Part shown: piece by piece, positions 2,326 through 64,000 of the stretch
How positions within the stretch are numbered: position 1 is the first letter of the stretch
Layout: every line of letters begins with the position of its first letter
Source of the DNA: Dendrobates tinctorius
Lineage: Eukaryota
Reading direction: 5' to 3'
Assembly: GCF_039654945.1 (NCBI RefSeq)
Contig: NW_027361869.1
Location: 7,006,001-7,070,000, forward strand
Length of the DNA stretch: 64,000 bases
Made by a program: the position numbers and the translations under genes
Notes under the pieces: generated by a model
Databases searched by the model: none
What the model was told of the DNA's origin: nothing
What the model saw: only the letters and a program-made list of their open reading frames with translations

Positions 2326-5300
2326 CCAGTTGGCACTGATCATACAGCTCAGCAGGGAGTAGGTGGTGGCTCTGATCATACAGCTCTGCGGGGACAAAGT
2401 GTATGCACTTATGTTACAGCTTTGCGGGGACAAGGTGGTGGCACTGATCATACAGCTCTGCAGGGAGGAGTTGGTGGCACTGAACATACAGCTCAGCGTG
2501 GACAAAGTGGTGGCACTGATCTTAAAGCTCTACAAGGATGAGGTGGTGGTACTAATCATACAGCTCTGCAGGGAGGAGGTGGTGGCACTGATCATACAGC
2601 TCTGCGGGGACAAGATGGAGGCACTGATGATAAGGCTCTGCAGGGATGATGTGGTGGCACTGATCGTACAGGTCTGCAGGGATGAGGTGGTAGCACTCAT
2701 CATACAGCTTTGCGTGGACAAGGTGGTGGCACTGATCATATAGCTCTGAGGGGATGACGTGGTGGCACTGATCAAATAGCTCTGCAGGGATTAGGTGGTG
2801 GCACTGATCATACAGCTCTGCAAGGAGTAGGCGGTGGCACTGATTCAACAGCTGTGCGAGAAGTAGGTAGTGGTACTGATCATACAGCTCTGTGCTGACC
2901 AACTGGTGGCACTGTTCATGCGGTGACAAGGTGGTAGCACTGATTATACAGTTCTGCGGCGACAAGGTGGGGGCACTGATCATACATGTCTGCAGGGAAA
3001 AGGTGGTGGCACTGAACATACAGATCAGCGCGGACAAGGTGGTGGCACTGATCAGACAGCTCTACAGGGAGGAGGTTGTGGCACTAAACTGGTTTGCAGG
3101 GATGAGGTAGTGGCACTGATTATACAGCTCTGCAGTGAGAGGTGGTGGCACTGAAGATACAGCTGTGCAGGGGTGAGGTGGTTGCACTGATCATACAGCT
3201 CTGCAGGGAGTAGGCGGTGGCACTGATCATACAGCTCTGCGGGGACTTGGTGGTGGTACTGATCATACAGCTCTGTGCTGACCAACTGGTGGCACTGATC
3301 ATACAACTTTGTGGTGACAAGGTGGTGGCACTGATTATACAGTTCTGCAGTGACAAGGTGGTGACACTGATCATACACCTCTGCGGCGATAAGGTGGTGG
3401 TACTGATCATACAGCTCTTCAAGGACCAGGTGGTGGCACTGATCATACAGCTTTGCGGGGACAATGTGTTTGCACTGATTATACATCTCTTAAGGTATAA
3501 GTTGGAGGCACTGATCATGCGGTTCTTCAGGGATGAGGTTGTGGCACTGATCATACAGCTCTGCAGGGATGAGGTAGTGGCACAGATCATACAGCTCTTC
3601 AGGAATGAGGTAGTGGCACAGATCATACAGCTCTGCAGAGAGGAGGTGGTGGCACTGATTAAACAGCTTTGCAGGGATGAGGTAGTGGCACAGATCCTAC
3701 AGACCTGCAGGGACAAGGTGGTGGCACTGATCATACAGCTCTGCAGGGACAAGGTGGTGACACTGATCATACACCTCTGCGGCGATAAGGTGGTGGTACT
3801 GATCATACAGCTCTGCAAGGACCAGGTGGTGGCACTAAACCGCTGCACGACCAGCTCTACCCTCGCCTACTGTATTACCACCCATCCCTTGAAGATTGTG
3901 AGCCCTCGCGGGCAGGGTCCTCTCTCCTCCTGTACCAGTTATGACTTGTATTGTTTAAGATTATTGTACTTGTTTTTATGTATACCCCTCCTCACATGTA
4001 AAGCGCCATGGAATAAATGGCGCTATAACAATAAATAATAATAATAATAATAATAATCAAACAGCTCTGCAGAGACGAGGTGGTGGCACTGATTATACAG
4101 CTCTGCAGGGAGGAGATGGTGGCACTGATCATACAGCTCTGCAGGAAGTAGGAGGTGGCACTGATTATACAGCTCTGTGTGGATAAGATGGTGGCACTGA
4201 TCATACAGCTCTGCAGGGAGGAGTTGGTGGCACAGATCACACAGCTCTGCAGGGATGAGGAGGTGGCACTGATCATGCAGCTATATAGGTAAGAGGTGAT
4301 GTCACTGATCATACTGCTCTGCAGGGAAGAGGTGGTGACACTGATCAAACAGCTTTGCGGGGACAAAGTGGTTGCACTGATTATACATCTCTTAAGGTAT
4401 AAGTTGGAGGCACTGATCATGCGGTTCTTCAGGGATGAGGTTGTGGCACTGATCATACAGCTCTTTAGGGATGAGGTAGTGGCACAGATCATACAGCTCT
4501 GCAGAGAGGAGGTGGTGGCACTGATTATACAGCTTTGCAGGTAGGAGATGGTGGCACTGATCATAAAGCTCTGCAGGGAGTAGGTGGAGGCACTGATCAT
4601 ACAGCTCTGCGGGGAGAATTTGATTGCACTGATCATACAGCTCTGCGGGGAGAATTTGATTGCACTGATCGTACAGCTCTGCTCGGACAAAGTGGTGGCA
4701 CTTATGATACAGCTTTGTGGGGACAAGGTGGTGGCACTGATCATACAGCTCTGCAGTGACTAGGTTGTGGCACTGATCATGCAGTTCTGCAGGGATGAGG
4801 TGGTGGCACTGATCATACAGCTCTGCAGGGAAAATTTGGTGACACTGATCATACACCTCTGCGTCGACAAGGTGGTGGTACTGATCATACAGCTGTGCAA
4901 GGACCAGGTGGTGGCACTGATCATAAAGCTCTGCAGAGAGGAGGTGGTGGCACTGATTATACAGCTTTGCAGGGAGGAGATGGTGGCACTGATCATACAG
5001 CTCTGTGGGGACAATTTGATGGCACTGATCAAACAGCTCTGCTCAGATAAAGTGGTGGCACTTATGATACAGCTTTGCGGGGACAAGGTGGTGGCACTGA
5101 ACATATAGCTCAGCGTGGACAAGGTGGTGGCTCTGATCTTAAAGCTCCACAAGGATGAGGTGTAGGTACTAATCATACTGCTCTGCAGGGAGGAGATGGT
5201 GGCACTGATCATACAGCTCTGCGGGGACAAGATGGTGGCACTGATCATGAAGATCTGCAGGGATGATGTGGTGGCACTGATGATACAGGTCTGCAGAGAT

Positions 5301-8300
5301 GAGGTGGTAGCACTCCTCATACAGCTTTGCAGGGACGAGGTGGTGGCACTGATCATACAGCTTTTCATGGACAAGGTGGTGGCACTGATCAAACAGCTCT
5401 GCAAGGACGAGGTGTTGGCACTGATCATACAGCTTTGCGGGGACAATGTGGTTGCACTGTTTCTACATCTCTTTAGGTATAAGTTGGATGCACTGATCAG
5501 GGATGATGTTGTGGCACAGATCATACAGCTCTGCAGAGAGGAGGTGGTGGCACTGATTACACAGCTTTGCAGGGAGGAGATGGTGGCACTGATCATACAG
5601 CTCTGCTCGGACAAAGTGGTGGCACTTATGATACAGCTTTGTGGGGACAAGGTGGTGGCACTGATCATACAGCTCTGAAGTGACGAGGTTGTGGCACTGA
5701 TCATGCAGTTCTGCAGGGATGAGGTAGTGGCAGCGATCATACAGCTCTGCAGGGATGATTCAGTAGCACAGATCATACAGCCCCGCAGGGATGAGGTGGT
5801 GGCACTGATCATACAGCTCTGCAGTGAAAAGTTGGTGACACTGATCATACACCTCTGCGGCGACAAGGTGTTGGTACTGATCATACAGCTCTGCAAGGAC
5901 CAGGTGGTGGCACTGATCATAAAGCTCTGCAGAGAGGAGGTGGTGGCACTGATTATTCAGCTTTGCAGGGAGCAGATGGTGGCACTGATCATACAGTTCT
6001 GTTGGGACAATTTGATGGCACTGATCATACAGCTATGCTCGGACAAAGTGGTGGCACTTATGATACAGCTTTGCGGGGACAAGGTGGTGGCACTGAACAT
6101 ATAGCTCAGCGTGGACAAGGTGGTGGCTCTGATCTTAAAGCTCTACAAGGATGAGGTGGAGGTACTAATCGTACAGCTCTGCAGGGAGGAGGTTGTGGCA
6201 CTGAGCAAACAGCTCTGCATGGAAAGGTGGTGGCACTGAACATACAGCTCAGCGTGTACAAGGTGGTGGCACTGAACATACAGCTCAGCGTGTACAAGGT
6301 GGTGGCACTGATCAGACAGCTCTACAGGGAGGAGGTAGTGGCACTGATCATACAGCTCTGCCGGTATGAGGTGATGGCACTGAAGATACAGCTCTGCAGG
6401 GATGAGGTGGTTGAACTGATCTTGCAGCTCTGCAGGGAGTAGGTGGTGGCACTGATCTTAAAGCTCTGCGGGGACAATTTGATGGCACTGATCATACAGC
6501 TCTGCTCACACAAAGTGGTGGCACTTATCATACAGCTTTGTGGGGACAAGGTGGTGGCACTGATCATGCACTTCTGCAGGGATGAGGTAGCGGCACCGAT
6601 CATACAGCTCTGCAGGGATGATTCAGTAGCACAGATCATACAGCCTGCAGGGATGAGGTGGTGGCGTGTCACTGATCATACAGCTCTGCAGGGAAAAGTT
6701 GGTGACACTGATCATACACCTCTGCGGCGACAAGGTGGTGGTACTGATCATACAGCTCTGAAGGGAATAGGTGGTGGCACAGATCCTACAGACCTGCAGG
6801 GACAAGGTGGTGACACTGATCATACACCTCTGCGGCGACAAGGTGGTGGTACTGATCATACAGCTCTGCAAGGACCAGGTGGTGGCACTAATCATACAGC
6901 ACTGCAGAGACGAGGTGGTGGCACTGATTATACAGCTCTGCAGGGATTAGATGGTGGCACTGATCATACAGCTCTGCAGGCAGTAGGAGGTGGCACTGAT
7001 TATACAGCTCTGTGTGGATAAGGTGGTGGCACTGATCATACAGCTCTGCAGGGAGGAGTTGGTGGCACTGATCATACAGCTCTGCAGGTAAGAGGTGGTG
7101 TCACTGATCATACAGCTCTGCAGGGACAATGTGGTTGCACTGATTATACATCTCTTTAGGTATAAGTTGGAGGCACTGATCATGTGGTTCTGCAGTGATG
7201 AGGTTGTGGCACTGATCATACAGCTCTGCTCGCACAAAGTGGTGGCACTGATCATACAACTTTGCGGTGACAAGGTGGTGGCACTGATTTACAGTTCTGT
7301 GGCGACACGGTGGTGGCACTGATCATACAGGTCTGCAGGGAGGAGGTTGTCGCACTGAACATACTGGTTTTCAGGGATGAGGTGGTGGCACAGATCATAC
7401 AGCTCTGCAGAGAGGAGGTGGTGGCACTGATTATACAGCTTTGCAGGGAGGAGATGGTGGCACTGATCATACAGCTCTGCAGAGAGTAGGTGGTGGCAAT
7501 GATCATACAGCTCTGCGGGGACAATTTGATGGCACTGATCATACAGCTCTGCTTGGACAAAGTGGTGGCACTTATGATACAGCTTTGTGGGGACAAGATG
7601 GTGGCACTGATCATACAGCTCTGCAGTGACGAGGTTGTGGCACTAATCATGCAGTTCTGCTGGGATGAGGTAGTGGCACCGATCATACAGCTCTGCAGGG
7701 ATGTTTCAGTAGCACAGATCATACAGCCCTGCAGGGATGAGGTGGTGGCACTGATCATACACCTCTGCGGCGACAAGGTGGTGGTACTGATCATACAGCT
7801 CTGCAAGGACCAGGTGGTGGCACTGATCTTAAAGCTCTGCAGGGATGAGGTGGTGGCACTGATCATACAGCTCTGCAGAGAGGAGGTGGTGGCACTGATC
7901 ATACACCTCTGCGGGGACAAGGTGGTGACACTGATTATACACGTCTGTGGCGACAAGGTGCTGGTACTGATCATACAGCTCTGCAGGGAGGAGGTGGTGG
8001 CACTGATCATACACCTCTGCAGCAACAAGGTGGTGGCACTGATCTTAAAGCTCTGCCGGGATGAGGTGGTGGCACTGATCATACAGCTCTGCAGAGAGGA
8101 GGTGGTGGCACTGATTATACAGCTTTGCAGGGAGGATATGGTAGCATTGATCATTCAGCTCTGTGTGGATAAGATGGTGGCACTGATCATACAGCTCTGC
8201 AAGGACGAGGTGTTGGCACTGATCATACAGCTTTGCAGGGACAATGTGGTTGCACTGATTATACATCTCTTTAGGGATAAGTTGGAGCCACTGATCATGC

Positions 8301-11143
8301 AGCTCTGCAGGGATGAGGTTGTGGCACTGATCATACAGCTCTGCAGGGATGAGTTAGTGGCTCAGATCATACAGCTCTGCAGGGATGAGGTAGTGGCACA
8401 GATCACACAGCTCTGCAGGGACGAGGAGGTGGCACTGATCATACAGCTCTGTGGTGAGGAGGCGGTGGCACTGATCATAAGGCTCTGCAGGGACAAGGTT
8501 GTGTCACTGATCTTACAGCTCTGCAGGGAGTAGGTGGTGGCATTGATCATTCAGCTCTGTGTGGATAAGATGGTGGCACTAATCATGCAGCTCTGCAGGT
8601 ATGAGGTGGTGTCACTGATTATACAGCTTTGTGGGGACAATGTAGTTGCACTGATTATACATCTCTTTAGGGATAAGTTGGAGCCACTGATCATACAGCT
8701 CTGCAGGGACGAGGAGGTGGCACTGATCATACAGCTCTGTGGAGACAAGGTGGTGGCACTGATAATACACCTCTGCGGTGACAAGGTGGTGGTACTGATC
8801 ATACAGCTCTGCAGAGAGGAGGTGGTGACACTGATCATACAGCTCTGAAGGGAATAGGTGGTGGCACTGATCATACAGCTCTGTAGGGATGAGGTGGTTG
8901 CACTGATCATACAGCTCTGTAGGGATGAGGTGGTTGCACTGATCATACAGCTCTATGGGGAGGAGGCGGTGGCACTGATCATAAGGCTCTGTAGGGACAA
9001 GGTTGTGTCACTGATCTTACAGCTCTGCAGGGGTGAGGTAGTGGCACAGATCACACAGCGCTGCAAGGACCAGGTGGTGGCACTGATCATACAGCTCTGC
9101 AGGGACGAGGAGGTGGCACTGATCATACAGCTCTGCGGGGACAAGGTGGTGACACTGATAATACACCTCTGAGGCGACAAGGTGGTGGTACTGATCATAC
9201 AGCTCTGCAGAGAGGAGGTGGTGGCACTGATCATACAGCTCTGAAGGGAATATGTGGTGGCACTGATCATAAAGTTCTGCAGTGACGAGGTGGTGGCACT
9301 AATCATACTGTTTTGCAGGGAGGAGGTGGTGGCACTGATCATACAGCTCAGCAGGGAGGAGGTGGTGGCACTGATCATACAGCTCAGCAGGGAGGAGGTG
9401 TTGGCACTGATCATACAGCTTTGCGGGGATAATGTGGTTGCACTGATTATACATCTCTTTAGGGATAAGTTGGAGGCACTGATCATGCAGTTCTGCAGGG
9501 ATGAGATAGTGGCTCAGATCATACAGCTCTGCAGGGACGAGGAGGTGGCACTGATCATACACCTCTGCGGCCACAAGGTGGTGGTACTAATCATACAGCT
9601 CTGCAGGGATGATTCAGTAGAACAGATCATACAGCCCTGTAGGGATGAGGTGATGGCACTGATCATACAGCTCTGCAGGGAAAAGTTGGTGACACTGATC
9701 ATACAGCTCTGCTCGCACAAAGTGGTGGCACTTATGATACAGCTTTGTGGGGACAAGGTGGTGTCACTGATCATGCAGTTCTGCAGGGATGAGGTAGTGA
9801 CACCGATCATACAGCTCTGCAGGTATGATTCAGTAGCACAGATCATACAGCCTGCAGGGATGAGGTGGTGGCACTGATCATACACCTCTGCGGCGACAAG
9901 GTGGTGTTAATGATCATACAGCTCTGCAAGGACCAGGTGGTGGCACTAATCATACAGCTCTGCAGAGACAAGGTGGTGGCACTGATTATACAGCTCTGCA
10001 GGGAGGAGGTTGTCGCACTGAACATACTGGTTTGCAGGGATGTGGTGGTGGCACAGATCATACAGCTCTGCAGAGAGGAGGTGGTGGCACTGATTATACA
10101 GCTTTGCAGGGAGGAGATGGTGGCACTGATCATACAGCTCTGCTCGGACAAAGTGGTGGCACTTATGATACAGCTTTGTGGGGACAAGATGTTGGCACTG
10201 ATCATACAGCTCTGCAGTGACGAGGTCGTGGCACTGATCATGCAGTTCTGCAGGGATGAGGTAGTGGCACCGATCATACAGCTCTGCAGGGATGTTTCAG
10301 TAGCACAGATCATACAGCCCTGCAGGGATGAGGTGGTGGCACTGATCATACAGCTCTTCAGGGAAAAGTTGGTGACGCTGATCATACACCTCTGCGGCGA
10401 CAAGGTGGTGGCACTGATTATACAGTTCTGCGGCGACAAGGTGGTGGCACTGATCACACAGGTCTGCAGGGAAAAGGTGGTGTTATTGAACATACAGCTC
10501 AGCGCGGACAAGGTGGTGGCACTGATCAGACAGCTCTACAGGGAGGAGGTTGTGGCACTAAACATACTGGTTTGCAGGGATGAGGTTGTGGCACTGATCA
10601 TACAGCTCTGCAGGGAATAGGTGGTGGCACTGATCGTGCAGCTCTGCTGGGACAAGATGGTGGTACTGATCATAAAGCTCTGCAGGGATGATGTAGTGGC
10701 ACTGATCATACAGGTCTGCAGAGACGAGGTGGTGGCACTGATCATACAACTTTTCGTGGACAAGGTGGTGGCACTGATCAGACAGCTTTGCGTGTACAAG
10801 GTGGTGGCACTAATCAGGTAGCCCTGAGGGGATGACGTGGTGGCACTGATCAAAAAGCTCTGCAGGGATTAGGTGGTGGCACTGATCATACAGCTCTGCA
10901 AGGAGTAGGCGGTGGCACTGATCATACAGCTTGCGTTGACAATGTGGTGGCACTGATTATACAGTTCTGCGGCGAAAAGGTGGTGGCACTGATCATACAG
11001 CTCTGCATGTAAAGGTGGTGGCACTGAACATACAGCTCTGCAGGGAAAAGGTGGTGGCACTGAACATACAGGTCAGCAGGGACGAGGTGGTGGCACTCAT
11101 TATAGAACTCTGCAGGGGTGAAGTGGTGGCACTGATCATACAG
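2326..11143. repeat. 36-bp satellite array 1 (~240 diverged units), related to the histone 3'-processing signal
   Basis: Consensus GGTGGTGGCACTGATCATACAGCTCTGCAGGGANGA; 12-aa periodicity in ORF translations. Confidence 0.97.
3838..4057 (+). mobile_element. L2/SINE-type 3' fragment inserted in the satellite
   Basis: L2-type 3' end GATTGTGAGCCCTCGCGGGCAGGG...GGCGCTATA followed by a (TAA)n tail; resembles the 3' end of the L2 at 55158. Confidence 0.75.
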
Positions 11144-12167
11144 GCCAAAAATGGGGGACGGGGTATGGAGTATGGCATGCGGATGGAGAGCACATTGATG
11201 CTGGAACCAGCGCGTCGCCTATCACGCTCCCCCATCAGTACATAGGTTTTCATCTGTGCTTTTTTTTTTTTAGTAATTACAGAAAAGCAGGAGGATTTGT
11301 GGTTTATTGGCTTAATTAATTTTCTTCTGTTACATAATATTTGTTCAGTGAACCTGCGGATAATTACACTACACTAATGTGGGGTTAACCCTCTGTGTAG
11401 CTCTAGGACTTTTCACCAATGATGGCAATTAGCTCGATCTGCACGTGCCGCAATCTCCTCAGTCACTTACAGTATTATCGGGACTCCCAGCTGTTTCTGC
11501 ACTGATTACAGGGGGCTATAAGCAGCAGATGTTCTCGAGGAGCCCGATGTGAGATGAAGGTGGCGCATCTGTGAACACTGGTAAATAAGAGGGGATCAGC
11601 AGGAACAAGGCAAGTAAGAGGTTAAACAGAGGAGGAAAGGCGTCTATGTACATCGCTGAAGGCTGAGGGCGGCGCTTAACCGAGGATTCCCGCTCATTGT
11701 CTGATCGCAGGATCCGTTTGGGGATTTGAACTTCCCGCTCTTCTTCCGCCGAGGATTATTAGCGGACATCACAATCCGGTCACACAGAGAACCGCGCAGA
11801 GTCCGGCCCTCCAGAGCCGCCATCACGGGATCGCCCTCCGGGAGGAGCAGCAGTCACTGATGTGGACAATCACCGGCCGCCATCCCCCGATACTCCGGGA
11901 CGTGATAACCGCATGTAATCTCCACAGCGGAGTCAGGGGCCCGAGTATCAAGACATTCACTAATGAGGGACATTTCCTGTGACTATTCGAGGACTCCTCT
12001 CCCCACACAGGTCTGAGGCTTCATGTGATAACCCAGACATGGGCATCCTCAGTGTTTTGTGTTGAACCCCGGAATCAAGTGTGTATGGGCACCAACCTAC
12101 AAACTGGTGGCGGCAGCCCGTGGTGCCTAACGTCAGTCCCATGTGAGCACGCAGAGATCAGCGGCGT

Positions 12168-12208
12168 CAGCTCTTGTGGCGACGGTGTGGGTGGCTCTTA
12201 GAAGAGCC
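12168..12208 (-). terminator. H2A 3' stem-loop and HDE
   Basis: Minus strand GGCTCTTCTAAGAGCC (12193-12208), ACCCA, then AAGAGCTG (12168-12175). Confidence 0.93.
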
Positions 12209-12241
12209 TTTGGTGTTGTGGACAGAGATCGGCGGCAGCGC

Positions 12242-13329
<1,088 letters not shown>

Positions 13330-13363
13330 TCTGCTCAGTCTGCTGCTCCGCCATCACCCCAAA

Positions 13364-13405
13364 GGCTCTTCTAAGAGCCACCACCCCATCTCCATCAGAG
13401 CTGTG
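13364..13405 (+). terminator. H2B 3' stem-loop and HDE
   Basis: GGCTCTTCTAAGAGCC (13364-13379), ACCACCCCATCTCCAT, CAGAGCTGTG. Confidence 0.94.
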
Positions 13406-15082
13406 GCTGCTCCTGTGTCCTTTCCCGTCTCCCCGAGTTGTCTGCTCCACCGCCTGGGTCTCTGCGTCTAGTGACGGGAAGTGACAGGTGAAGGAAGTAG
13501 GGATGATGAATGCTACCAAGGAGATTGTGAGAACCGAGGACCTTCTAAATAATAACCTGGTCACTTCTCCATAAGTTGCTCTGTGTTCAGGGACTACTCT
13601 TTAACCCCTTGCTCCACAGATCTTGATATTCTGGGGTCTCATTCATTTGGTATAACATGATTCGGTTTAGTTCATGATACACCATGATGACTAATAACAC
13701 TTTCTAAGCCGGGATGCTTTGAGACTGAATTTTCTCCCCCATGCAGCACCAGACAGTGAGCTGACGATTTTCCTCTCTGCACTTAGTTCATGATTCTCGT
13801 GTTTTTCCTCAAATAACAGGAGACATTTGTAGTCGGTGCAGTTTTATCTAGAGATTATGCTGGAGTCTTCACTGTAAAGGGAAGCGGTGACGACATTTTA
13901 GAAGCAGCGGGAAATTCAAACCCCCTAACCGTCCTGTGTTCAGCCAATCCGCAGAGGGAGGGGAGGAGCTAATGTTCCCAATGGTTGACACGTTTGCAGT
14001 TCCCGCTTTTTCTGTTCTTTGTCTCCATATAACGCGCGGTCCCAGGACGGAGCGATGTCGGGGAATCTGCAGGTGTTGAGAGGTCGCTGGTCGCTTACAT
14101 CCCATACAGGAGTCTGCAGCTGTTCCTGGTTAGAGAATGAATCCGCGTTAGGCAGATGCTGTGATGCCCCGTGTGTCTGACCTGCAGGCGATCACATCTC
14201 CCTTTCTCGTCATAATCCGTATTGTGGAGACAATATATTGGCTAGAGATGTATCCTACAAGAGACATTTCAGGGGAGACCAATTCTGCTCTTCCAAGCAG
14301 ATCCCACCTGCAGCTCCAGGCAGGAGGTCTGTGATGGGAAATGTGCGATCATGTAGAGAAGATTGCCGAGAGCTCAGTGCACAATACATTACACTGTGAT
14401 GTCAGGATCCTCTAGGTCAGACATGTCATGACATCATCTCCCATCACATCCTCCTCACAGATGTTTTTTAAATAATTACTGCAGGATATGGGGCGATATT
14501 GGCGGCTGGGATCAGTCAGGATCACTGCTGAGCTCTGATTTTCAGCCTTTTCTGTCATTATGTTAATAATTGTTTTTCCTAATTAATTGTAGCTGACAGC
14601 AGGTCCCTACTCTGCAGCAATGTGAGCTATGATGTGGTGGAAAAAAGAATCATTGCCAGGGGAAGAAGAAAACACAAATATAAGGACAATAGTGTCATAA
14701 TTGCCCGAAGTAATGATGACTCCTATCATAGCACAAATGTCCCTAATGCGGGAATATAAGACCTGAATAAAGGCAGAGAGGGCTTAGCCCTGGGGTTAAT
14801 ATAAATGTAATATTCTCTATGAAAACCGGAGATCCTGTGATTACTGAGGACTGAGCCTTATATCAGGCAGTGTATCTACCGGTGTGAGATCCCCTGGGCG
14901 GCTGCCTGTAATATCTGTGGTTACAGTCTGTTCTGTCCTCCTGACATATACTGGGGCCGAGTCTGCTCCCCTCTATTTGTGCTGCCCATTTATCTATAGG
15001 CTGAATCTGGAATAATTCTCATCACAGGGGAAGAAGTGACATTATATTACAAGCTGGAAAGAAAAGGGAAACTGAACAATGA

Positions 15083-15245: not shown

Positions 15246-15584
<339 letters not shown>

Positions 15585-16029: not shown

Positions 16030-16078
16030 GGCTCCTATCAGAGCCGCACACATGTGTTCTGGAGAAGCTACAATTCCT
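16030..16078 (+). other. Orphan degenerate histone stem-loop with HDE-like segment
   Basis: CCAAA GGCTCCTATCAGAGCC GCACACATG..GGAGAAGCTACAATTCC resembles the H4 3' end. Confidence 0.6.
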
Positions 16079-19828: not shown

Positions 19829-20308
<480 letters not shown>

Positions 20309-20711
20309 CTATTCACGCTTCATGAGGACACGTCCCCTGCATTCCATTGGTTATTTTGTAGAATGTGAGCAGCGAATAGCGTTTGATGTCCGCGACCAAT
20401 CACTGTACAGAGAAGGCTCAACCTGACTCACAGTTCAGCTATCACCCACTGCTCTGATACACAGGGTCACATCCAATCTCCAGGCGGCTTCTACAGCGGA
20501 AGCTCCGATTCTATATTCCCAGTACCCAGAGCGGTACAGCAGCTCCTCTATAATCAGTCACTGACGCTCCAACTCTCACATCGGAGTTATAACCTCACAC
20601 CACTCTTACTAAGATGTGGGTTACAGGTGGTGATAATTAGGATGATGGAAGTAACGTGATTTCTGCTGCACATCGGCCCCTTCCCTCCATTACACAGAAC
20701 TGTCACCTGAA

Positions 20712-21583
20712 GGCACCGATCATACAGCTCTGCGGGGAGGAGGTGGAGGCACTGATCATACAGCTCTGCGGGGAGGAGGTGGTGGCACTAATCATACAGC
20801 TCTGCGAGGGACAAGGTGGTGGCACTGATCATACAGCTCTGCGGGGACAGGGTGGTGGCACTAATCATACAGCTCTGCGGGGACAGGGTGGTGGCACTAA
20901 TCATACAGCTCTGCGGGGGACAAGGTGGTGGCACTAATCATACAGATCTGCGAGGACAGGGTGGTGGCACTGATCATACAGCTCTGCGGGGACAGGGTGG
21001 TGGCACTAATCATACAGCTCTGCGGGGACAGGGTGGTGGCACTGATCATACACCTCTGCGGGGACAGGGTGGTGGCACTGATCATACAGCTCTACGAGGA
21101 CAGGGTGGTGGCACTGATCATACAGCTCTGCGGGGACAGGGTGGTGGCTCAGATCATACAGCTCTGCGGGGACAGGGTGGTGGCACTGATCATACAGCTC
21201 TGCGGGGACAGGGTGGTGGCTCAGATCATACAGCTCTGCGGGGACAGGGTGGTGGCACTGATCATACAGCTCTGCGGGGACAGGGTGGTGGCACTGATCA
21301 TACAGCTCTACGAGGACAGGGTGGTGGCACTAATCATACAGCTCTGCGAGGACAGGGTGGTGGCTCAGATCATACAGCTCTACGAGGACAGGGTGGTGGC
21401 ACCGATCATACAGCTCTACGAGGACAGGGTGGTGGCTCAGATCATACAGCTCTGCGAGGACAGGGTGGTGGCACTGATCATACAGCTCTGCGGGGACAGG
21501 GTGGTGGCACTGATCATACAGCTCTACGAGGACAGGGTGGTGGCACCGATCATACAGCTCTGCGGGGACAGGGTGGTGGCTCT
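20712..21583. repeat. 36-bp satellite array 2 (~24 homogeneous units) starting at the H1 stem-loop
   Basis: (GGACAGGGTGGTGGCACTGATCATACAGCTCTGCGG)n; the last unit merges into GGCTCTGAAAAGAGCC. Confidence 0.97.
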
Positions 21584-21593
21584 GAAAAGAGCC
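21553..21593 (-). terminator. H1 3' stem-loop and HDE
   Basis: Minus strand GGCTCTTTTCAGAGCC (21578-21593), ACCACCCTGTCCCCG, CAGAGCTGTA (21553-21562). Confidence 0.95.
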
Positions 21594-21620
21594 TTTGTGT
21601 AAAATAACTGGGTCCGCAAC

Positions 21621-22235
21621 TTATTTCTTGGCCGCGGGCTTCTTGGCTTTCTTAGCCGGACTCTTGGCAGCTTTAGGTTTGGCCGCCTTTTTAGCCGGAC
21701 TCTTCGTCGCCTTCTTAGGCTTGGGAGCGGCTTTCGACTTCTTGGGGCTCTTGGCCGCTTTCTTGGCAGCTGCAGGCTTCTTGGCCTTTTTCGGGCTCTT
21801 CTTGGCCGTGGTCAGAGCCTTCTTGGGCTTCTTCGGAGATTTGGCGGCTTTCTTAGCAGCAACGGGTTTCTTGGGCTTGGCTGACTTCTTGGCCACTTTA
21901 GTCTCCTGCTTCTTGGTGAGTTTGAAGGACCCGGAGGCGCCGCTGCCCTTCACCTGGAGGAGGGTGCCCTTGGTGACCAGAGACCTGACGGCCAGCTTCA
22001 GGCGGCTGTTGTTCTTCTCTACATCGTACCCTCCGGCAGACAGCGCCTTCTTCAGGGCGGCCAGAGACACCCCACTGCGCTCCTTAGAGGCTGACACGGC
22101 TTTCACGATCAGCTCGGAGACGCCAGGACCAGAGGATTTCTTGCTGCTCTTGGCGGCGGATTTCTTTGGCTGCTTCTTGGCTTTGGCAGCCGGTTCTGCG
22201 GGAGGGGGAGCGGCGGCTGGCGCGGTCTCTGCCAT
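21621..22235 (-). CDS. H1: Linker histone H1, 204 aa
   Basis: [15 protein letters not shown]..., globular domain [39 protein letters not shown]-rich tail with SPKK motifs. Confidence 0.98.
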
Positions 22236-22304
22236 CCTTATGCTACGGAGCCAAAACACAAAAATCTCCCGATAGGAAAACACTAAGGCCGGAGCTGGAG
22301 GAGT

Positions 22305-22435
22305 CTGTTATATGTACAGGCTTACTGTGCACTGATTGGCTGCTGAGCTACAGGCTTACTGTGCACTGATTGGCTGCTGAGCTACACCGTCCTGAGCATC
22401 TATTGGCTGACACTGCATACATGCCCCGCCTCTTC
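22305..22435 (-). promoter_or_regulatory. H1 promoter with a tandemly duplicated 34-bp CCAAT module
   Basis: CATATAA near 22310 on minus; 22315-22348 equals 22349-22382; third CCAAT near 22402; GC box near 22424. Confidence 0.8.
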
Positions 22436-23171
22436 CCAGCTGAGAACGAGTGAAGCTCCGCTCTCCCCTTGTGCTTCCCTGCCCGGAATAAAAGCCCTTT
22501 ACCGGCTGACACCGGACAGCAGAGCGCGCTTCCTCCGCCGCTTCTTCTTCGCCATCTTCTCCACCGACCGTCTGTAGCTGTCACTAGCAGAGACGCCGGG
22601 GAAGAGCGGAGAGGAGGTCCCGGGATCATCGCCGTCGTCCTCCAGATCTGCACATCGCTGTGTATCCGGGAAGATACATCTGCTGGGGGAACTCGTTCCT
22701 CCTGTTCCCGGCTCCTGTCACCATCACAGGGATCTTTACTACAATGTCTATCGTACAGGACGCTGATTGTACGATGTGGGGACGACCTGGAGCTGCTGAG
22801 AGCCCAGAAGGGTAACACAGGCGATGGCTTCGCTGACTGCCGCCTCCCTGACCTGTGACCTCCCTGTACCCCGTATGTGCGGAGTATTGGGGGTGACAGA
22901 TGCTCCACATCAGGAGATGATCCACATCGGCTGATTGCAATGACCTGCTAATATCTGGTCTCACCCATTGTGGAGCTGTGACCGCTGAGGCCTGTAATGG
23001 TGGAAGAGAACTGATAAGGGGCAGCTTCATAATGCGACTCACTCCCCAACCAGACGCATCTCCGGGGAGAAAACTGTGAGATATTCCTGGATTTATGTGA
23101 CCCAACTATTGTGCAAAAGGGGAATATTGGGAGAAAAGAGGAGACACAAAATCCAATTTCTACACACAGAG

Positions 23172-24022
23172 CACAGCTGTATAGGGATGAGGTGGTGGCA
23201 CTTATCATAAAGCTCTGCAGGGATTAAGTGGTGGCACTGATGATACAGGTGTGCAGGGACGAGGTGGTGGCACTGATCATACAGCTCTGCAGGGAGTAGG
23301 TGGTGGCACTGATCATACAGCTCTGTGTGGATAAGATGGTGGCACTGATCATGCAGCTCTGCAGGGATGAGGTTGTGGCACTGATCATACAGCTCTGCAG
23401 GGATGAGGTAGTGGCACAGATCACACAGCTCTGCAAGGACCAGGTGGTGGCACTGATCATACAGCTCTGCGGCGACAAGGTGGTGGTACTGATCATACAG
23501 CTCTGCAGAGAGGAGGTGGTGGCACTGATCATACAGCTCTGAAGGGAATGTGTGGTGGCACTGATCATAAAGTTCTGCAGTGAGGAGTTGGTAGCACTAA
23601 TCATACTGCTTTTCAGGGAGGAGGTGGTGGCACTGATCATACAGCTCTGCAGGAATGAGGAGGTGGCACTGATCATACAGCTCTGCGGGGACAAGGTGGT
23701 GACACTGATAATACACCTCTGCGGCGACAAGGTGGTGGCACTGATCATACAGCTCTGCGGGGACAAGGTGTTGGTACTGATCATACAGCTCTGCAAGGAC
23801 CAGGTGGTGGCACTTATCATACAGCTCTGCAGAGAGGAAGTGGTGGCACTGATCATACACCTCTGCGGCGACAAGGTGTTGGTACTGATCATACAGCTCT
23901 GCAAGGACCAGGTGGTGGCACTTATCATACAGCTCTGCAGAGAGGAGGTGGTGGCACTGATCATGCAGCTCTGCTCGGACAAAGTGGTGGCACTTATGTT
24001 ACAGCTTTGCAGGGACAAGGTG
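23172..24022. repeat. 36-bp satellite array 3 (~23 units)
   Basis: Same consensus and variant units as array 1. Confidence 0.96.
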
Positions 24023-26856
24023 GGTTTTGGCCGTTGCAGCTGAAAAGAGGAAATCGGAAAACCAGGGGAAGAGTCTTGAGGAGATCATTTGCATATTCCC
24101 AGTGCCTTCTGGGATAAGTGAAGAGTCTCCGCGAGCTCTACGATCACTGGGTTTTGGCCGTTGCAGCTGAAAAGAGGAAATCGGAAAACCAGGGGAAGAG
24201 TCTTGAGGAGATCATTTGCATATTCCCAGTGCCTTCTGGGATAAGTGAAGAGTCTCCGCGAGCTCTACGATCACTGGGTTTTGGCCGTTGCAGCTGAAAA
24301 GAGGAAATCGGAAAACCAGGGGAAGAGTCTTGAGGAGATCATTTGCATATTCCCAGTGCCTTCTGGGATAAGTGAAGAGTCTCCGCGAGCTCTACGATCA
24401 CTGGGTTTTGGCCGTTGCAGCTGAAAAGAGGAAATCGGAAAACCAGGGGAAGAGTCTTGAGGAGATCATTTGCATATTCCCAGTGCCTTCTGGGATAAGT
24501 GAAGAGTCTCCGCGAGCTCTACGATCACTGGGTTTTGGCCGTTGCAGCTGAAAAGAGGAAATCGGAAAACCAGGGGAAGAGTCTTGAGGAGATCATTTGC
24601 ATATTCCCAGTGCCTTCTGGGATAAGTGAAGAGTCTCCGCGAGCTCTACGATCACTGGGTTTTGGCCGTTGCAGCTGAAAAGAGGAAATCGGAAAACCAG
24701 GGGAAGAGTCTTGAGGAGATCATTTGCATATTCCCAGTGCCTTCTGGGATAAGTGAAGAGTCTCCGCGAGCTCTACGATCACTGGGTTTTGGCCGTTGCA
24801 GCTGAAAAGAGGAAATCGGAAAACCAGGGGAAGAGTCTTGAGGAGATCATTTGCATATTCCCAGTGCCTTCTGGGATAAGTGAAGAGTCTCCGCGAGCTC
24901 TACGATCACTGGGTTTTGGCCGTTGCAGCTGAAAAGAGGAAATCGGAAAACCAGGGGAAGAGTCTTGAGGAGATCATTTGCATATTCCCAGTGCCTTCTG
25001 GGATAAGTGAAGAGTCTCCGCGAGCTCTACGATCACTGGGTTTTGGCCGTTGCAGCTGAAAAGAGGAAATCGGAAAACCAGGGGAAGAGTCTTGAGGAGA
25101 TCATTTGCATATTCCCAGTGCCTTCTGGGATAAGTGAAGAGTCTCCGCGAGCTCTACGATCACTGGGTTTTGGCCGTTGCAGCTGAAAAGAGGAAATCGG
25201 AAAACCAGGGGAAGAGTCTTGAGGAGATCATTTGCATATTCCCAGTGCCTTCTGGGATAAGTGAAGAGTCTCCGCGAGCTCTACGATCACTGGGTTTTGG
25301 CCGTTGCAGCTGAAAAGAGGAAATCGGAAAACCAGGGGAAGAGTCTTGAGGAGATCATTTGCATATTCCCAGTGCCTTCTGGGATAAGTGAAGAGTCTCC
25401 GCGAGCTCTACGATCACTGGGTTTTGGCCGTTGCAGCTGAAAAGAGGAAATCGGAAAACCAGGGGAAGAGTCTTGAGGAGATCATTTGCATATTCCCAGT
25501 GCCTTCTGGGATAAGTGAAGAGTCTCCGCGAGCTCTACGATCACTGGGTTTTGGCCGTTGCAGCTGAAAAGAGGAAATCGGAAAACCAGGGGAAGAGTCT
25601 TGAGGAGATCATTTGCATATTCCCAGTGCCTTCTGGGATAAGTGAAGAGTCTCCGCGAGCTCTACGATCACTGGGTTTTGGCCGTTGCAGCTGAAAAGAG
25701 GAAATCGGAAAACCAGGGGAAGAGTCTTGAGGAGATCATTTGCATATTCCCAGTGCCTTCTGGGATAAGTGAAGAGTCTCCGCGAGCTCTACGATCACTG
25801 GGTTTTGGCCGTTGCAGCTGAAAAGAGGAAATCGGAAAACCAGGGGAAGAGTCTTGAGGAGATCATTTGCATATTCCCAGTGCCTTCTGGGATAAGTGAA
25901 GAGTCTCCGCGAGCTCTACGATCACTGGGTTTTGGCCGTTGCAGCTGAAAAGAGGAAATCGGAAAACCAGGGGAAGAGTCTTGAGGAGATCATTTGCATA
26001 TTCCCAGTGCCTTCTGGGATAAGTGAAGAGTCTCCGCGAGCTCTACGATCACTGGGTTTTGGCCGTTGCAGCTGAAAAGAGGAAATCGGAAAACCAGGGG
26101 AAGAGTCTTGAGGAGATCATTTGCATATTCCCAGTGCCTTCTGGGATAAGTGAAGAGTCTCCGCGAGCTCTACGATCACTGGGTTTTGGCCGTTGCAGCT
26201 GAAAAGAGGAAATCGGAAAACCAGGGGAAGAGTCTTGAGGAGATCATTTGCATATTCCCAGTGCCTTCTGGGATAAGTGAAGAGTCTCCGCGAGCTCTAC
26301 GATCACTGGGTTTTGGCCGTTGCAGCTGAAAAGAGGAAATCGGAAAACCAGGGGAAGAGTCTTGAGGAGATCATTTGCATATTCCCAGTGCCTTCTGGGA
26401 TAAGTGAAGAGTCTCCGCGAGCTCTACGATCACTGGGTTTTGGCCGTTGCAGCTGAAAAGAGGAAATCGGAAAACCAGGGGAAGAGTCTTGAGGAGATCA
26501 TTTGCATATTCCCAGTGCCTTCTGGGATAAGTGAAGAGTCTCCGCGAGCTCTACGATCACTGGGTTTTGGCCGTTGCAGCTGAAAAGAGGAAATCGGAAA
26601 ACCAGGGGAAGAGTCTTGAGGAGATCATTTGCATATTCCCAGTGCCTTCTGGGATAAGTGAAGAGTCTCCGCGAGCTCTACGATCACTGGGTTTTGGCCG
26701 TTGCAGCTGAAAAGAGGAAATCGGAAAACCAGGGGAAGAGTCTTGAGGAGATCATTTGCATATTCCCAGTGCCTTCTGGGATAAGTGAAGCGTCTCCGCG
26801 AGCTCTACGATCACTGGGTTTTGGCCGTTGCAGCTGAAAAGAGGAAATCGGAAAAA
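24021..26856 (+). repeat. 127-bp tandem monomers (22 plus a partial copy) at the 5' end of CR1
   Basis: Unit starts at 24021 and recurs every 127 bp to 26815; one substitution seen (26791); each unit contains ATTTGCAT. Confidence 0.97.
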
Positions 26857-27985: not shown

Positions 27986-30718
27986 ATGGGCAACAAACAA
28001 GGAGAATTGGAACTACTAACACAGGAAAAGAAATATGATGTCATTGGAATCACTGAAACTTGGTGGGACGATACACATGATTGGAATACAAGACTAGAAG
28101 GATACAACTTATTTGCAAGAAACAGACTTGATAAACGAGGAGGAGGTGTTGCATTGTATGTTAGAAACGCGTATATCTGCACAGAGATTGAAGCTTCAGA
28201 GACTGGGAGATCTGTGGAAACTGTTTGGGTAAGAATACAAGGACAGAACAATGGAAAGGACACCATTGTAGGCATTTACTACAGGCCGCCTGTGCAAGCT
28301 GAAGATATGGATGAACTCTTTATGCATCAAATGGCCAAGTTCTCCAAAAAATATGACATAGTTGTCATGGGAGATTTCAACTATCCAGACATTTGTTGGG
28401 AATCTCTCTCAGGCAAAACTAACAGGTCAAGGAAATTCTTATCCTCTCTTGCTGACAACTTTATCTTCCAAAAGGTAGGGGAGAAAACAAGGGGAACTGC
28501 TACCTTGGATCTAATCCTTATAAACAGGGAGGAAATGGTTGAGGAGGTAAAAGTGGCTGGAACCCTAGGAGGTAGCGACCATGCTATTTTAGAATTTTGG
28601 ATAACTAGAGGCGGAAGACCTGTGAAGACTCAGACGTCAAGGTTAGATTTCAGAAAGGCAGATTTTAAGGGATTCAGAAAGATAATTGGAGGGATCCAAT
28701 GGCTGGATATCCTTAAAGACAAAAATGTCCAGGAAGGATAGGAAATCTTGAAAAATGAAATTCTCAAAGCACAGTTGTTAACAATTCCGAAAAGAGGGAA
28801 GAATAGGAAGCATTTAAGGAAACCAGGATGGGTGAACACAGAACTAAAGCACATGCTAAAAAGGAAGAAAAAAATGTTTATAAAATGGAAAGAGGGAGGC
28901 ATATCTAAAGAAGAATATAATGCTGTCTGCAGAATCTGCAGGGCACAAATCAGATTAGCTAAAGCTAAAAATGAATTGAGGCTTGCAAGAGATGTCAAAA
29001 GCAATAATAAAGGATTTTGGGGATATGTCAAAAGTAAAAGAAAAGTCAAAGATGCTATAGGATTTTTACAGGATGAAAATGATGAAATGGTAAGACAGGA
29101 TGTTGAGAAGGCTGAACTTTTAAATTCCTATTTTGCATCTGTTTTCTCTCAGAAAGGAAATGTAACACCAACTGTTATTCACTGTCCTATTAAGGGAATA
29201 GAAGAATCCAGGATATCTATAAACAGAAAGATAGTGAGGAAACACTTAGCTAACCTAAATGAATTCAAGTCTCCAGGTCCAGATGAATTACACCCCAGAG
29301 TACTGAAGGAGATAGCAGAAGAAATTTCTGAACCACTCTCCATAATCTTTGAAAATTCTTGGAGAACAGGAGAAGTGCCAGAAGACTGGAGAAGAGCAAA
29401 TGTTGTTCCTATCTTCAAAAAGGGGAAGAAGGTGGACCCAGGCAACTATAGGCCGGTGAGTCTGACTTCTATACCAGGAAAGATCTTTGAACAAATTATT
29501 AAACAACATGTAAGTCAATACCTGGATAAGAATGAAGTGATCAAACAGAGTCAGCATGGGTTTGTAACTAATAAGTCATGTCAGACTAACTTAATTTCCT
29601 TCTATGACGGTATCACTGATTGGGTGGATCAAGGAAATGCTGTAGATATAGTATATCTTGACTTCAGCAAAGCATTTGACAAAGTCTCTCATACAATCCT
29701 TATTGAAAAAATGACTAAGTATGGAATGGACAAGGCAACTGTTAGGTGGATTCATAGCTGGCTTAGTGATCGGACCCAAAGAGTGGTCGTAAATGGCTGC
29801 ACATCCAGTTGGAAGAATGTCTCAAGTGGGGTACCACAGGGCTCTGTCCTCTGCCCTGTATTGTTCAACATCTTTATCAACGATTTAGATGAAGGAATTG
29901 AGGGTAAACTGATTAAATTTGCTGATGACACAAAGCTAGGAGGGATAGCTAATACTAGAGAAGAGAGAGAGAGGATTCAAAAAGATTTAAATAAACTGGA
30001 GAAGTGGGCAGTAACTAACAGAATGGTTTTTAACAGGGAGAAATGCAAAGTACTACATCTGGGCAATAAAAATGAAAAAAGCATATATAGAATGGGAGGA
30101 ATAGGGCTAAGTGACAGCACATGTGAAAAAGACTTGGGTATACTAATAGATCACAGACTGAATATGAGTCAACAGTGTGATGCAGCAGCAAAAAAGGCAA
30201 ATGCAGTTCTAGGATGTATTAACAGAAGCATACAGTCTAGATCACGTGAAGTCATTATTTCCCTCTACTCCTCTTTGGTCAGACCTCATCTGGAATATTG
30301 TGTCCAGTTTTGGGCACCACATTTTAAAAAAGACATCAACAAACTGGAGCAAGTTCAGAAAAGAGCGACTAGAATGGTGACCGGTCTGCAAACCCTGTCT
30401 TATGAGGAAAGGTTGCAGGATTTGGGAATGTTTAGTTTGCAAAAGAGAAGACTGAGAGGAGACTTAATTGCTGTCTACAAATATCTAAAGGGCTGTCACA
30501 TTGTAGAAGGATCAACTTTATTCTCATTTGCACAAGGAAAGACTAGAAGCAATGGGATGAAACTGAATGGGAGGAGACAAAGATTAGATATTAGAAAAAA
30601 CTTTTTGACAGTTAGAGTGATCAATGAGTGGAACAGGCTGCCACGAGAAGTGGTGAGTTCTCCTTCAATGGAAGTCTTCAAACAGAGGCTGGACAGACAT
30701 CTGACTGGGATGATTTAG
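27986..30718 (+). pseudogene. CR1 ORF2 (APE endonuclease and RT) with an in-frame TAG at 28739-28741
   Basis: GITETWW, MGDFNYPD, GGSDH; [22 protein letters not shown]. Confidence 0.93.
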
Positions 30719-51255: not shown

Positions 51256-51269
51256 TCCTTCTGCTCTGA

Positions 51270-51287
51270 TCCCAGCGCTGCCAACCA
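51270..51287 (-). other. Primer-binding site (tRNA-Leu-like); second copy at 60340-60357
   Basis: Minus strand TGGTTGGCAGCGCTGGGA just inside the LTR. Confidence 0.6.
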
Positions 51288-51290
51288 GTT

Positions 51291-63900: not shown

Positions 63901-64000
63901 AGTATATAGAGCAGTGTGTACAGGATATAGAGCAGTGTTTACAGTATATAGAGCAGTGTACGGTATATAGAACAGACTACAGTATATAGAGCAGTGTACA
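60992..64000. repeat. 19/21-bp satellite (ATATAGAGCAGTGTGTACAGT)n with a 984-bp higher-order duplication
   Basis: Direct inspection; rare ATCTAG variant at 61681 and 62665. Confidence 0.95.

What the first reader, a model, noticed from the sequence alone, without database searches (positions are those of the whole stretch)
20712..21593. Satellite made from the histone mRNA 3'-processing signal: tandem U7-binding HDEs starting inside the H1 stem-loop
Seen: on the H1 sense (minus) strand the gene ends GGCTCTTTTC[AGAGCCACCACCCTGTCCCCGCAGAGCTGTATGATC] and the bracketed 36-mer is then repeated ~24 times, mostly as AGTGCCACCACCCTGTCCCCGCAGAGCTGTATGATC, with some units keeping GAGCC. Each unit is the 3' stem arm, the ACCAC segment where cleavage occurs, a spacer and AGAGCTGTA. 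The H2B gene here has nearly the same layout (AGAGCCACCACCCCATCTCCATCAGAGCTGTG). Established: AGAGCTGT(A) is the histone downstream element that pairs with the 5' end of vertebrate U7 snRNA (..UUACAGCUCUUU..), and the units lack the 5' arm needed for SLBP binding. Inference: this is where the satellite arose, and the downstream part of an H1 pre-mRNA would be a multivalent U7 snRNP-binding RNA (back-up cleavage sites, termination aid, U7 sponge or histone-locus-body scaffold). I know of no description of such an array but cannot search.
Basis: partly seen in the sequence, partly recalled or inferred. Interest (0 to 1): 0.92.

Follow-up and report, generated by a model that had tools for sequence, protein, structure and literature searches.

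The report
Satellite copied from histone H1's end signal
Directly behind a frog histone H1 gene lie 24 tandem copies of the second half of the gene's own mRNA-cutting signal, each a possible docking site for U7 snRNA; the origin is well supported, but the copies decay like ordinary junk repeats and nothing shows that they are used.

Summary
On the minus strand, the H1 gene (21621-22235) ends in a canonical stem-loop (21593-21578). A 36-bp unit starts at the first base of the 3' arm. It holds the 3' arm, ACCACC, a 10-nt spacer, AGAGCTGTA and TGATC, and it repeats 24 times (20712-21585, 93% alike).

The same satellite forms two more same-strand arrays in the window: 2331-11143 (about 245 units) and 23183-24035 (23 units).

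Origin from the histone 3' signal is well supported. The unit also resembles the unamplified 3' flanks of H2B, H2A, H3 and H4. The H1-adjacent array is a private subfamily that includes H1's own signal.

Each intact unit can form 9 base pairs with the U7 5' end (-14 kcal/mol), within the range of the five real genes here (-9.9 to -18.8). No unit has a stem-loop for SLBP. The U7 site decays exactly like the functionless positions, and public-run contigs give no proof of read-through RNA.

Best reading: a gene-derived satellite that evolves neutrally, with incidental U7 sites. A U7-related role remains untested.

This scan has already reported the same satellite many times on other stretches of this genome. 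I found no description in the searched literature.

The parts
21621..22235 (-). Histone H1 coding sequence (204 aa plus stop), replication-dependent type
   Evidence: ORF, sequence. Best protein hits are dendrobatid frog H1 (Ranitomeya variabilis 92%, Phyllobates terribilis 89-91%), Pfam PF00538.
21578..21593 (-). H1 mRNA 3' stem-loop (SLBP site), the only one in 20400-24100
   Evidence: Rfam RF00032, 35.9 bits against a gathering score of 34. Motif scan. Folds to a 6-bp stem with a 4-nt loop, -9.3 kcal/mol.
21548..21583 (-). First 36-bp unit. It is H1's own signal: 3' stem arm, ACCACC with the expected cleavage site, 10-nt spacer, AGAGCTGTA, TGATC.
   Evidence: It differs from the modal array unit at one base (position 3, A instead of T).
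21553..21561 (-). H1 histone downstream element core AGAGCTGTA, 16 nt after the stem
   Evidence: Nine contiguous pairs with the U7 5' region, -14.0 kcal/mol. The spacing compares with 17-19 nt in H2B, H2A, H3 and H4.
20712..21585 (-). H1-adjacent 36-bp array of 24 units, ending in a partial unit GGTGCC before unique DNA
   Evidence: TRF. Units. Private variant ACCCTGTCC in 20 of 24 units, and in 0 of 263 units elsewhere.
20240..20711 (-). Unique spacer between the array and the H3 start codon, holding the H3 promoter. No AATAAA or ATTAAA on the sense strand between the H1 stop and H3.
19829..20239 (-). Histone H3 gene, next gene downstream on the same strand as H1
   Evidence: Stem-loop at 19797-19782.
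23183..24035 (-). Second array of the same satellite (23 units, about 82% alike), upstream of the H1 promoter, same orientation
2331..11143 (-). Third array of the same satellite (about 245 units, 77% alike), same orientation, starting about 1.05 kb downstream of the H2A stem-loop
13364..13405 (+). H2B stem-loop, ACCACC, spacer and AGAGCTGTG: the same layout, not amplified
   Evidence: Alignment to the satellite consensus gives z=7.7 against shuffles. U7 duplex -18.8 kcal/mol.

Best explanation
This is a satellite DNA whose monomer is the downstream half of the histone H1 mRNA 3'-processing signal.

Inferred history:
- An ancestral H1 3' flank carried a 36-bp segment running from the 3' stem arm to just past the U7-binding element.
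- That segment duplicated in tandem, perhaps by slippage between the similar hexamers AGAGCC and GGTGCC that bracket it.
- It then grew by unequal exchange into arrays behind H1 and between histone clusters.

In this copy, H1's working signal is the first unit of a young, locally homogenised 24-unit array.

The units keep the sequence needed to pair with U7 snRNA only because they are copies. They lack the SLBP stem-loop, they decay neutrally, and any U7 binding to rare read-through RNA is most likely incidental.
For: Shown:
- Exact in-register continuity from the stem-loop 3' arm into the array.
- The consensus of the large, separate array matches H1's signal at 32 of 36 positions (z=15). It also matches the independent, unamplified 3' flanks of H2B (z=7.7), H4 (5.6), H3 (4.9) and H2A (4.5).
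- The 16-nt spacing from stem to U7 site is gene-like.
- All 290 or so units in three arrays have one orientation, the H1 sense.
- The H1-adjacent array is a private subfamily: ACCCTGTCC in 20/24 units against 0/263, and mean identity 0.92 within against 0.80-0.82 to the other arrays. Its four distal units grade into the general type.
- The true 3'-arm form GAGCC occurs in 5/24 units here, against 5/240 and 0/23 elsewhere.
- Neutral decay in the 240-unit array: the U7-site core is 90.0% conserved, TGATC 90.6% and AGTGCC 92.0%. With base type controlled, core versus rest is A 0.932/0.925, C 0.871/0.852, G 0.861/0.876, T 0.927/0.912. Intact cores are 0.392 observed against 0.386 expected from independent decay.
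- In the H1 array, 2 of 9 core positions vary against 9 of 27 others (p=0.69).
- There are no extra stem-loops.

From the literature (PMC7026596): cutting base pairing to 9 bp left less than 5% cleavage even with a stem-loop. A substrate without the stem-loop was not cut by endogenous U7 snRNP.
Against: - Neutral-looking decay of single units does not exclude a function that needs only many approximate sites.
- 88% of the units next to H1 keep a perfect 9-bp U7 match, with a predicted duplex stronger than those of the real H3 and H4 genes here.
- One 93-nt contig, from a run guessed to be RNA in a related organism, bridges the H1 3' UTR, the stem-loop and the U7 site at about 38% of the H1 coding depth. 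This could be unprocessed or read-through RNA.
- The direction of origin (gene to satellite) rests on parsimony, because I could not read H1 flanks of outgroup frogs.
Confidence: 0.74

Rival explanations
1. Functional multivalent U7 array. When Pol II reads past the H1 cleavage site, the nascent RNA carries 24 U7 snRNP sites here, and hundreds in other copies. These would act as back-up cleavage or torpedo-entry sites that stop transcription before the H3 promoter about 470 bp further on. Alternatively, they would concentrate U7 snRNP at the histone locus body.
For: - Nine-bp match and -14 kcal/mol per unit, within the range of the real genes (-9.9 to -18.8), against -7.1 +/- 2.3 for shuffles.
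- Units keep the gene-like distance between ACCA and the U7 site.
- U7 snRNP cuts at a fixed distance from its binding site, and strong duplexes can be processed without SLBP (PMC7026596).
- H1 and H3 are in tandem, with no poly(A)-like signal between them.
- All arrays are in H1 sense.
- Amphibian oocyte 'spheres' at histone loci are U7-rich histone locus bodies (PMC12046345).
- Newt lampbrush loops read through into satellite DNA (PMC5615363).
- There is a bridging contig in X2.
Against: - No excess conservation of the U7 site over positions with no role, and no excess of intact cores.
- No SLBP site in any unit.
- A 9-bp duplex without a stem-loop is a poor substrate in vitro.
- In the run with very high H1 depth (X10, 6,000-14,000), the array bins have depth 0-60. 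The only RNA-labelled run of the window's own organism (X11) has nothing on the array.
- Uniform orientation is also what simple tandem growth gives.
Confidence: 0.16
2. Reverse direction. An older 36-bp satellite that happens to contain GCCACCACC and AGAGCTGTA recombined into the H1 3' flank at the 3' arm. H1 would then borrow its downstream element from the satellite.
For: - The bulk satellite is far more abundant than the H1-type variant. In X15 the summed contig depth is about 100,000 on the distal general-type units, against 70-600 on H1-type units.
- The other two arrays do not start at a stem-loop.
Against: - The unit resembles four other histone genes' unamplified flanks in content and spacing, which a chance satellite would not.
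- The junction falls exactly at the arm and keeps a gene-like 16-nt spacing.
- Units with the true arm GAGCC are enriched next to H1.
Confidence: 0.07
3. Assembly artefact: a collapsed or mis-joined repeat placed next to H1.
For: Repeats are prone to mis-assembly. One X15 contig joins 20842 to 21572, suggesting copies with other array lengths.
Against: - An exact 470-nt contig spans the distal flank into the array.
- 68-75-nt contigs cover the H1 3' UTR through the stem-loop in X15.
- A related organism shows the same H1-to-unit junction.
- The Ranitomeya imitator H1 model reads into the same unit.
Confidence: 0.03

Closest known systems
Canonical metazoan histone pre-mRNA 3'-processing signal (stem-loop, ACCCA, histone downstream element, U7 snRNP)
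   Same: The first unit is H1's working signal. Every unit keeps the 3' arm remnant, ACCACC, a 10-nt spacer and a core that pairs over 9 bp with the U7 5' region (PMC7026596).
   Different: Units 2-24 have no 5' arm or loop, so they have no SLBP site. They are tandemly iterated, and their cores decay neutrally.
PcP190 satellite of hyloid frogs, derived from 5S rDNA (PMC11675491, PMC4201667)
   Same: A frog satellite whose monomer derives from a functional segment of a tandemly repeated small gene family.
   Different: PcP190 has a 190-bp unit copied from a transcribed RNA gene. Here, a 36-bp unit is copied from a cis-acting RNA-processing signal, and it has stayed physically attached to the source gene.
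Newt (Notophthalmus) histone clusters embedded in satellite DNA, with read-through transcription on lampbrush loops (Diaz et al. 1981 and Gall et al. 1981, as cited in PMC5615363; PMC2114352)
   Same: An amphibian histone cluster flanked by long satellite arrays downstream of histone genes, giving an opportunity for read-through into the satellite.
   Different: As far as I know (from memory, not checked here), the newt satellite is not related to the histone 3' signal. Transcription of the present satellite is not shown.
Satellites born from other genic or mobile-element fragments (rDNA spacer, transposable elements, SINEs; PMC5615363, PMC10702118)
   Same: The same mode of birth: tandem duplication of a short pre-existing segment followed by unequal exchange.
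   Different: The source segment here is a binding site for a trans-acting snRNP, so each monomer is a potential RNA-level ligand.

Membership tests
Histone pre-mRNA 3'-processing signal | 16-nt stem-loop (6-bp stem, 4-nt loop) that binds SLBP | tested here: not met
   Met only by H1's own signal (RF00032, 35.9 bits). There is no other hit in 20400-24100 at E<=10. A scan for the 5' arm with up to 2 mismatches finds none inside the arrays.
Histone pre-mRNA 3'-processing signal | ACCA/ACCCA cleavage context immediately 3' of the stem position | tested here: met
   ACCACC follows the arm remnant in the consensus of all three arrays. It is 78-94% conserved per base in the large array.
Histone pre-mRNA 3'-processing signal | Downstream element complementary to the U7 snRNA 5' end, at gene-like spacing | tested here: met
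   Nine contiguous pairs and -14.0 kcal/mol with the U7 5' region shared by human and mouse (PMC7026596). The core is intact in 88%, 54% and 38% of units in the three arrays. Spacing is 16 nt against 17-19 nt in the other genes. This frog's own U7 was not available.
Histone pre-mRNA 3'-processing signal | U7-dependent cleavage of the RNA in vivo or in vitro | not testable with these tools
   Only assembled contigs of runs with a guessed library type were available.
Satellite DNA | Long head-to-tail arrays of one monomer at several places | tested here: met
   Three arrays with about 290 units in the window. Very high summed contig depth in X15. Earlier notes report arrays of 26-47 kb elsewhere in the genome (unchecked).
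Satellite DNA | Concerted evolution, meaning array-specific variants | tested here: met
   Identity within the H1 array is 0.92, against 0.80-0.82 between arrays. There are private diagnostic variants.
Gene-derived satellite (PcP190-like origin) | Monomer homologous to a functional segment of a gene | tested here: met
   z=15 against H1's signal, and 4.5-7.7 against four other histone 3' flanks, with 5,000 shuffles each.
Read-through-transcribed histone-linked satellite (newt type) | Satellite RNA made by read-through from histone genes | tested here: inconclusive
   Run X2 has a contig bridging 21556-21648 and also satellite contigs. X10 and X11 show little or nothing on the array. Library kinds are guessed and DNA carry-over cannot be excluded.

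The most novel reading that the evidence does not exclude
In cells with heavy histone-gene transcription, above all lampbrush-stage oocytes, read-through from H1 yields nascent RNA carrying tens to hundreds of U7 sites. This RNA would tether or nucleate the U7-rich histone locus body at the locus, or provide serial fail-safe cleavage that ends transcription before the next gene. It would be a satellite recruited as an RNA scaffold for a specific snRNP.
Probability: 0.12. Interest if true: 0.85.

Novelty: new variant of a known kind. Interest (0 to 1): 0.5.

Why it matters
Satellites born from pieces of genes or mobile elements are known. A satellite whose monomer is the docking site of a specific snRNP, still attached to the gene it came from and lying inside the histone locus, did not turn up in the searched literature.

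It gives a clean, datable example of satellite birth from a cis-acting RNA signal. The ancestral single copy, the first unit and the local subfamily are all visible.

If the arrays are transcribed, they would be a natural experiment on U7 snRNP recruitment, histone-gene termination and histone locus body assembly in amphibians, where such bodies sit on the histone loci. On present evidence they are most likely neutral.

Tried and rejected
- H1 flanks of other frogs. The look-up of encoding contigs returned gene maps but no DNA for Ranitomeya variabilis, Phyllobates terribilis, R. imitator and Hyla sarda, because the files were too large.
- Satellite distribution through predicted proteins.
  - Frame-1 array ORF: no hit.
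  - C-terminus of the R. imitator read-through H1 model: only itself.
  - Exhaustive HMMER with a frame-2 array ORF: only low-identity periodic proteins.
  - The best look-alike, P0195, lies on locus L001. It is an unrelated 36-bp repeat with no histone context.
- Exact 27-mer across the unit junction in JGI metagenome contigs: none.
- The neighbouring 127-bp repeat as a second derivative of the stem-loop: only a 10-nt match (CTCTTTTCAG), p about 0.03, so rejected.
- Higher-order periodicity in the 8.8-kb array: mean identity is flat (0.77-0.79) at lags 1-60, although some multi-unit blocks recur.
- Earlier notes of the scan name no U7 gene in this genome, so the frog's own U7 was not tested.
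- Literature searches found nothing describing such a repeat.

Full report
**What is there**

The window holds one histone cluster:
- H2A, 12242-12646, minus strand
- H2B, about 12950-13329, plus strand, with a masked N run at 13050-13186 that I left alone
- H4, 15273-15584, plus strand
- H3, 19829-20239, minus strand
- H1, 21621-22235, minus strand

Each gene ends in a stem-loop followed by ACC(A/C), a pyrimidine-rich spacer of 16-19 nt and a purine-rich core of the AGAGC type. Rfam scores the H1, H3 and H4 stem-loops above its gathering score. The H2A and H2B stem-loops have the loop UCUA and fall below it.

On the H1 sense strand the stem-loop lies at 21593-21578. A 36-bp unit begins at the first base of the 3' arm (21583). 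It contains the arm, ACCACC, a 10-nt spacer, AGAGCTGTA and TGATC, and it repeats head to tail down to 20712. Tandem Repeats Finder reports 24.2 copies, 93% matches and no indels.

**Surroundings**

The same 36-bp satellite forms two more arrays, at 2331-11143 (about 245 units, 77% matches) and at 23183-24035 (23 units, 82% matches). All 281 units found by a consensus scan lie in the H1 sense orientation, and none lies on the other strand.

The large array begins about 1.05 kb downstream of the H2A stem-loop. The small one lies upstream of the H1 promoter and abuts a 127-bp repeat. Neither starts at a stem-loop. The finding is therefore one array of a histone-cluster satellite and not an isolated oddity.

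Earlier notes of this scan report the same satellite behind other H1 genes and as spacers of 26-47 kb between histone clusters elsewhere in this genome. I did not check those notes. They show that the scan has found this before on other DNA.

**Origin**

The consensus of the large array, taken independently of H1, matches H1's own signal at 32 of 36 positions (z=15 against 5,000 shuffles). It also aligns significantly with the unamplified 3' flanks of H2B (z=7.7), H4 (5.6), H3 (4.9) and H2A (4.5). The distance from stem to core is 16 nt, gene-like against 17-19 nt in the other genes. A satellite unrelated to histone genes would not be expected to reproduce the content, order and spacing of the signal.

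The array next to H1 is a private subfamily:
- The spacer variant ACCCTGTCC occurs in 20 of its 24 units, including H1's own, and in 0 of 263 units of the other arrays.
- Its four distal units carry the general variants (CCTTGTCC, CCTCCTCC).
- Mean identity is 0.92 within the array, against 0.80-0.82 to the others.
- Units that keep the true arm GAGCC make up 5 of 24 here, against 5 of 240 and 0 of 23 elsewhere.
- The array ends with a partial unit, GGTGCC, before unique DNA.

AGAGCC and GGTGCC bracket the first unit as imperfect direct repeats. That makes slippage or unequal exchange between them a plausible first step. This is an inference.

**Other species**

- The nearest H1 proteins are from dendrobatid poison frogs.
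- One Ranitomeya imitator gene model (P0012) reads through its stop. Its tail translates the stem-loop, then one satellite unit of the CCTCCTCC type, then the core of a second unit in a shifted frame.
- Contigs of a run from a related coded organism (X2, whose H1 is about 94% identical) include a 93-nt piece covering the H1 3' UTR, the stem-loop and the first unit as far as mid-core. They also include array pieces carrying the H1-type variant.

The H1-satellite junction is therefore older than this copy and probably older than this species. The satellite did not arise at this particular copy.

**U7 pairing**

The U7 5' region GUGUUACAGCUCUUUUAG is identical in the human and mouse sequences printed in PMC7026596. 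Predicted duplex energies with that region are:

| Target | Energy (kcal/mol) |
|---|---|
| H1 signal and modal unit (9 contiguous pairs) | -14.0 |
| H2B | -18.8 |
| H2A | -15.0 |
| H3 | -10.6 |
| H4 | -9.9 |
| Shuffled units | -7.1 +/- 2.3 |
| Other 36-mers of the window | -7.4 +/- 2.8 |

All five real genes pair with the mammalian sequence, and H2B does so over about 14 pairs. That is indirect evidence that this frog's U7 5' end is conserved, although its U7 gene was not available. The intact core is present in 88%, 54% and 38% of units in the three arrays.

**Signs of use**

*Stem-loops.* No unit has one. At E<=10, Rfam finds a single Histone3 hit in 20400-24100.

*Decay in the 240-unit array.*
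- The core is 90.0% conserved, the same as TGATC (90.6%) and AGTGCC (92.0%), which have no role in processing.
- Only the spacer is more variable (76.5%), mainly at a CpG.
- With base type controlled, core and non-core positions are indistinguishable.
- Intact cores are as frequent as independent decay predicts (0.392 against 0.386).
- In the H1 array, 2 of 9 core positions vary against 9 of 27 others (p=0.69).

*Biochemistry.* PMC7026596 reports that reducing pairing to 9 bp left less than 5% cleavage even with a stem-loop. A substrate lacking the stem-loop was not cut by endogenous U7 snRNP, while strong duplexes can dispense with SLBP. A 9-bp site without SLBP is therefore expected to be weak.

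*Reads.* Only Logan contigs of runs with a guessed library type were available.

| Run | Organism and type | What it shows |
|---|---|---|
| X15 | The window's organism, probably DNA | Holds the locus, including an exact 470-nt contig from the distal flank into the array |
| X10 | Organism B, labelled RNA? | Depth 6,000-14,000 on H1 coding sequence, 0-60 on the array |
| X11 | The window's organism, labelled RNA? | Nothing on the array |
| X2 | Organism A, labelled RNA? | Bridging contig at depth 15.9 against 41.7 on the coding sequence, plus satellite contigs up to about 400 |

The X2 result could be read-through or poly(A)-enriched misprocessed RNA, or it could be DNA carry-over. Contigs show presence, not absence. 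Transcription remains open.

**Mechanism**

Most likely (about 0.74), the array is a neutrally evolving satellite born from the H1 3' signal. H1's working signal is its first unit, and the U7 sites are a by-product of copying.

The functional alternative (about 0.16) is that read-through RNA is cut or bound serially by U7 snRNP. That would stop transcription before the H3 promoter about 470 bp downstream, or concentrate U7 snRNP at the locus. Points in its favour:
- There is no AATAAA or ATTAAA between the H1 stop and H3.
- Amphibian oocyte histone locus bodies are U7-rich and sit at histone loci (PMC12046345).
- Newt lampbrush loops read through into satellites (PMC5615363).

None of this is evidence for the present array.

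**Comparison and novelty**

The closest known things are:
- the canonical histone 3' signal, of which the units meet the cleavage-context and U7-site features but fail the stem-loop feature;
- gene-derived frog satellites such as PcP190, derived from 5S rDNA (PMC11675491);
- the satellite-embedded histone clusters of newts.

Full-text searches for a satellite built from the histone downstream element or from U7 sites found nothing. I rate it a new variant of a known kind, namely a gene-fragment-derived satellite. Its interest is moderate: it shows a clear example of satellite birth and offers a testable but currently unsupported link to U7 biology.

Noticed in passing
window 24021-26855: A 127-bp tandem repeat with 22 copies, 99% identical, directly abutting the 36-bp array. 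Each unit holds an octamer motif (ATGCAAAT on the minus strand) and a 10-nt match to the stem-loop 5' arm and loop (CTCTTTTCAG). The match is not significant (p about 0.03), and no other similarity was found in the window.
   Followed up: partly
window 16030-16045 (+): A degenerate stem-loop-like element (GGCTCC TATC AGAGCC) preceded by CCCAAA, about 400 bp downstream of the H4 stem-loop, with no histone ORF before it. It may be a relic of a dead histone gene's 3' end.
   Followed up: no
window 22315-22386: An exact 34-bp tandem duplication in the H1 promoter. Each copy contains a CCAAT box (CAGCCAATCA on the H1 sense strand).
   Followed up: no
window 12193-12208 (-) and 13364-13379 (+): The H2A and H2B stem-loops have the loop UCUA instead of UUUC. 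They fall below the Rfam Histone3 gathering score, so a gathering-threshold scan misses two of the five genes.
   Followed up: partly
protein P0012 (Ranitomeya imitator, CAJ0937837.1): An annotated H1 protein that lacks the N-terminus and reads through the stop into the stem-loop and two satellite units. It is probably a pseudogene or a gene-model error, but it is useful as cross-species evidence for the H1-satellite junction.
   Followed up: partly
window 20842/21572: One X15 contig (depth 5.9) joins 20842 to 21572 with 8 other letters between. This hints at cluster copies with much shorter arrays behind H1. The shorter side is only 26 nt, so the joint is weak.
   Followed up: no
window 5561-5655, 6016-6087, 9663-9761, 10096-10188, 24036-23925: A distinctive block of 2-3 units (with CAAAGCTGTA[A/T]CATAAGTGCC) recurs at several places in the large array and opens the small upstream array. 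Multi-unit blocks have therefore been copied between and within arrays, even though no regular higher-order period is seen.
   Followed up: partly
window 8-1114, 28748-30718, 46699-55059, 61031-63997: The cluster is flanked by mobile-element ORFs: an integrase fragment, a LINE-type reverse transcriptase and two Ty3/gypsy-like pol copies. An unrelated 21-bp satellite of about 145 copies lies at the window's end.
   Followed up: no
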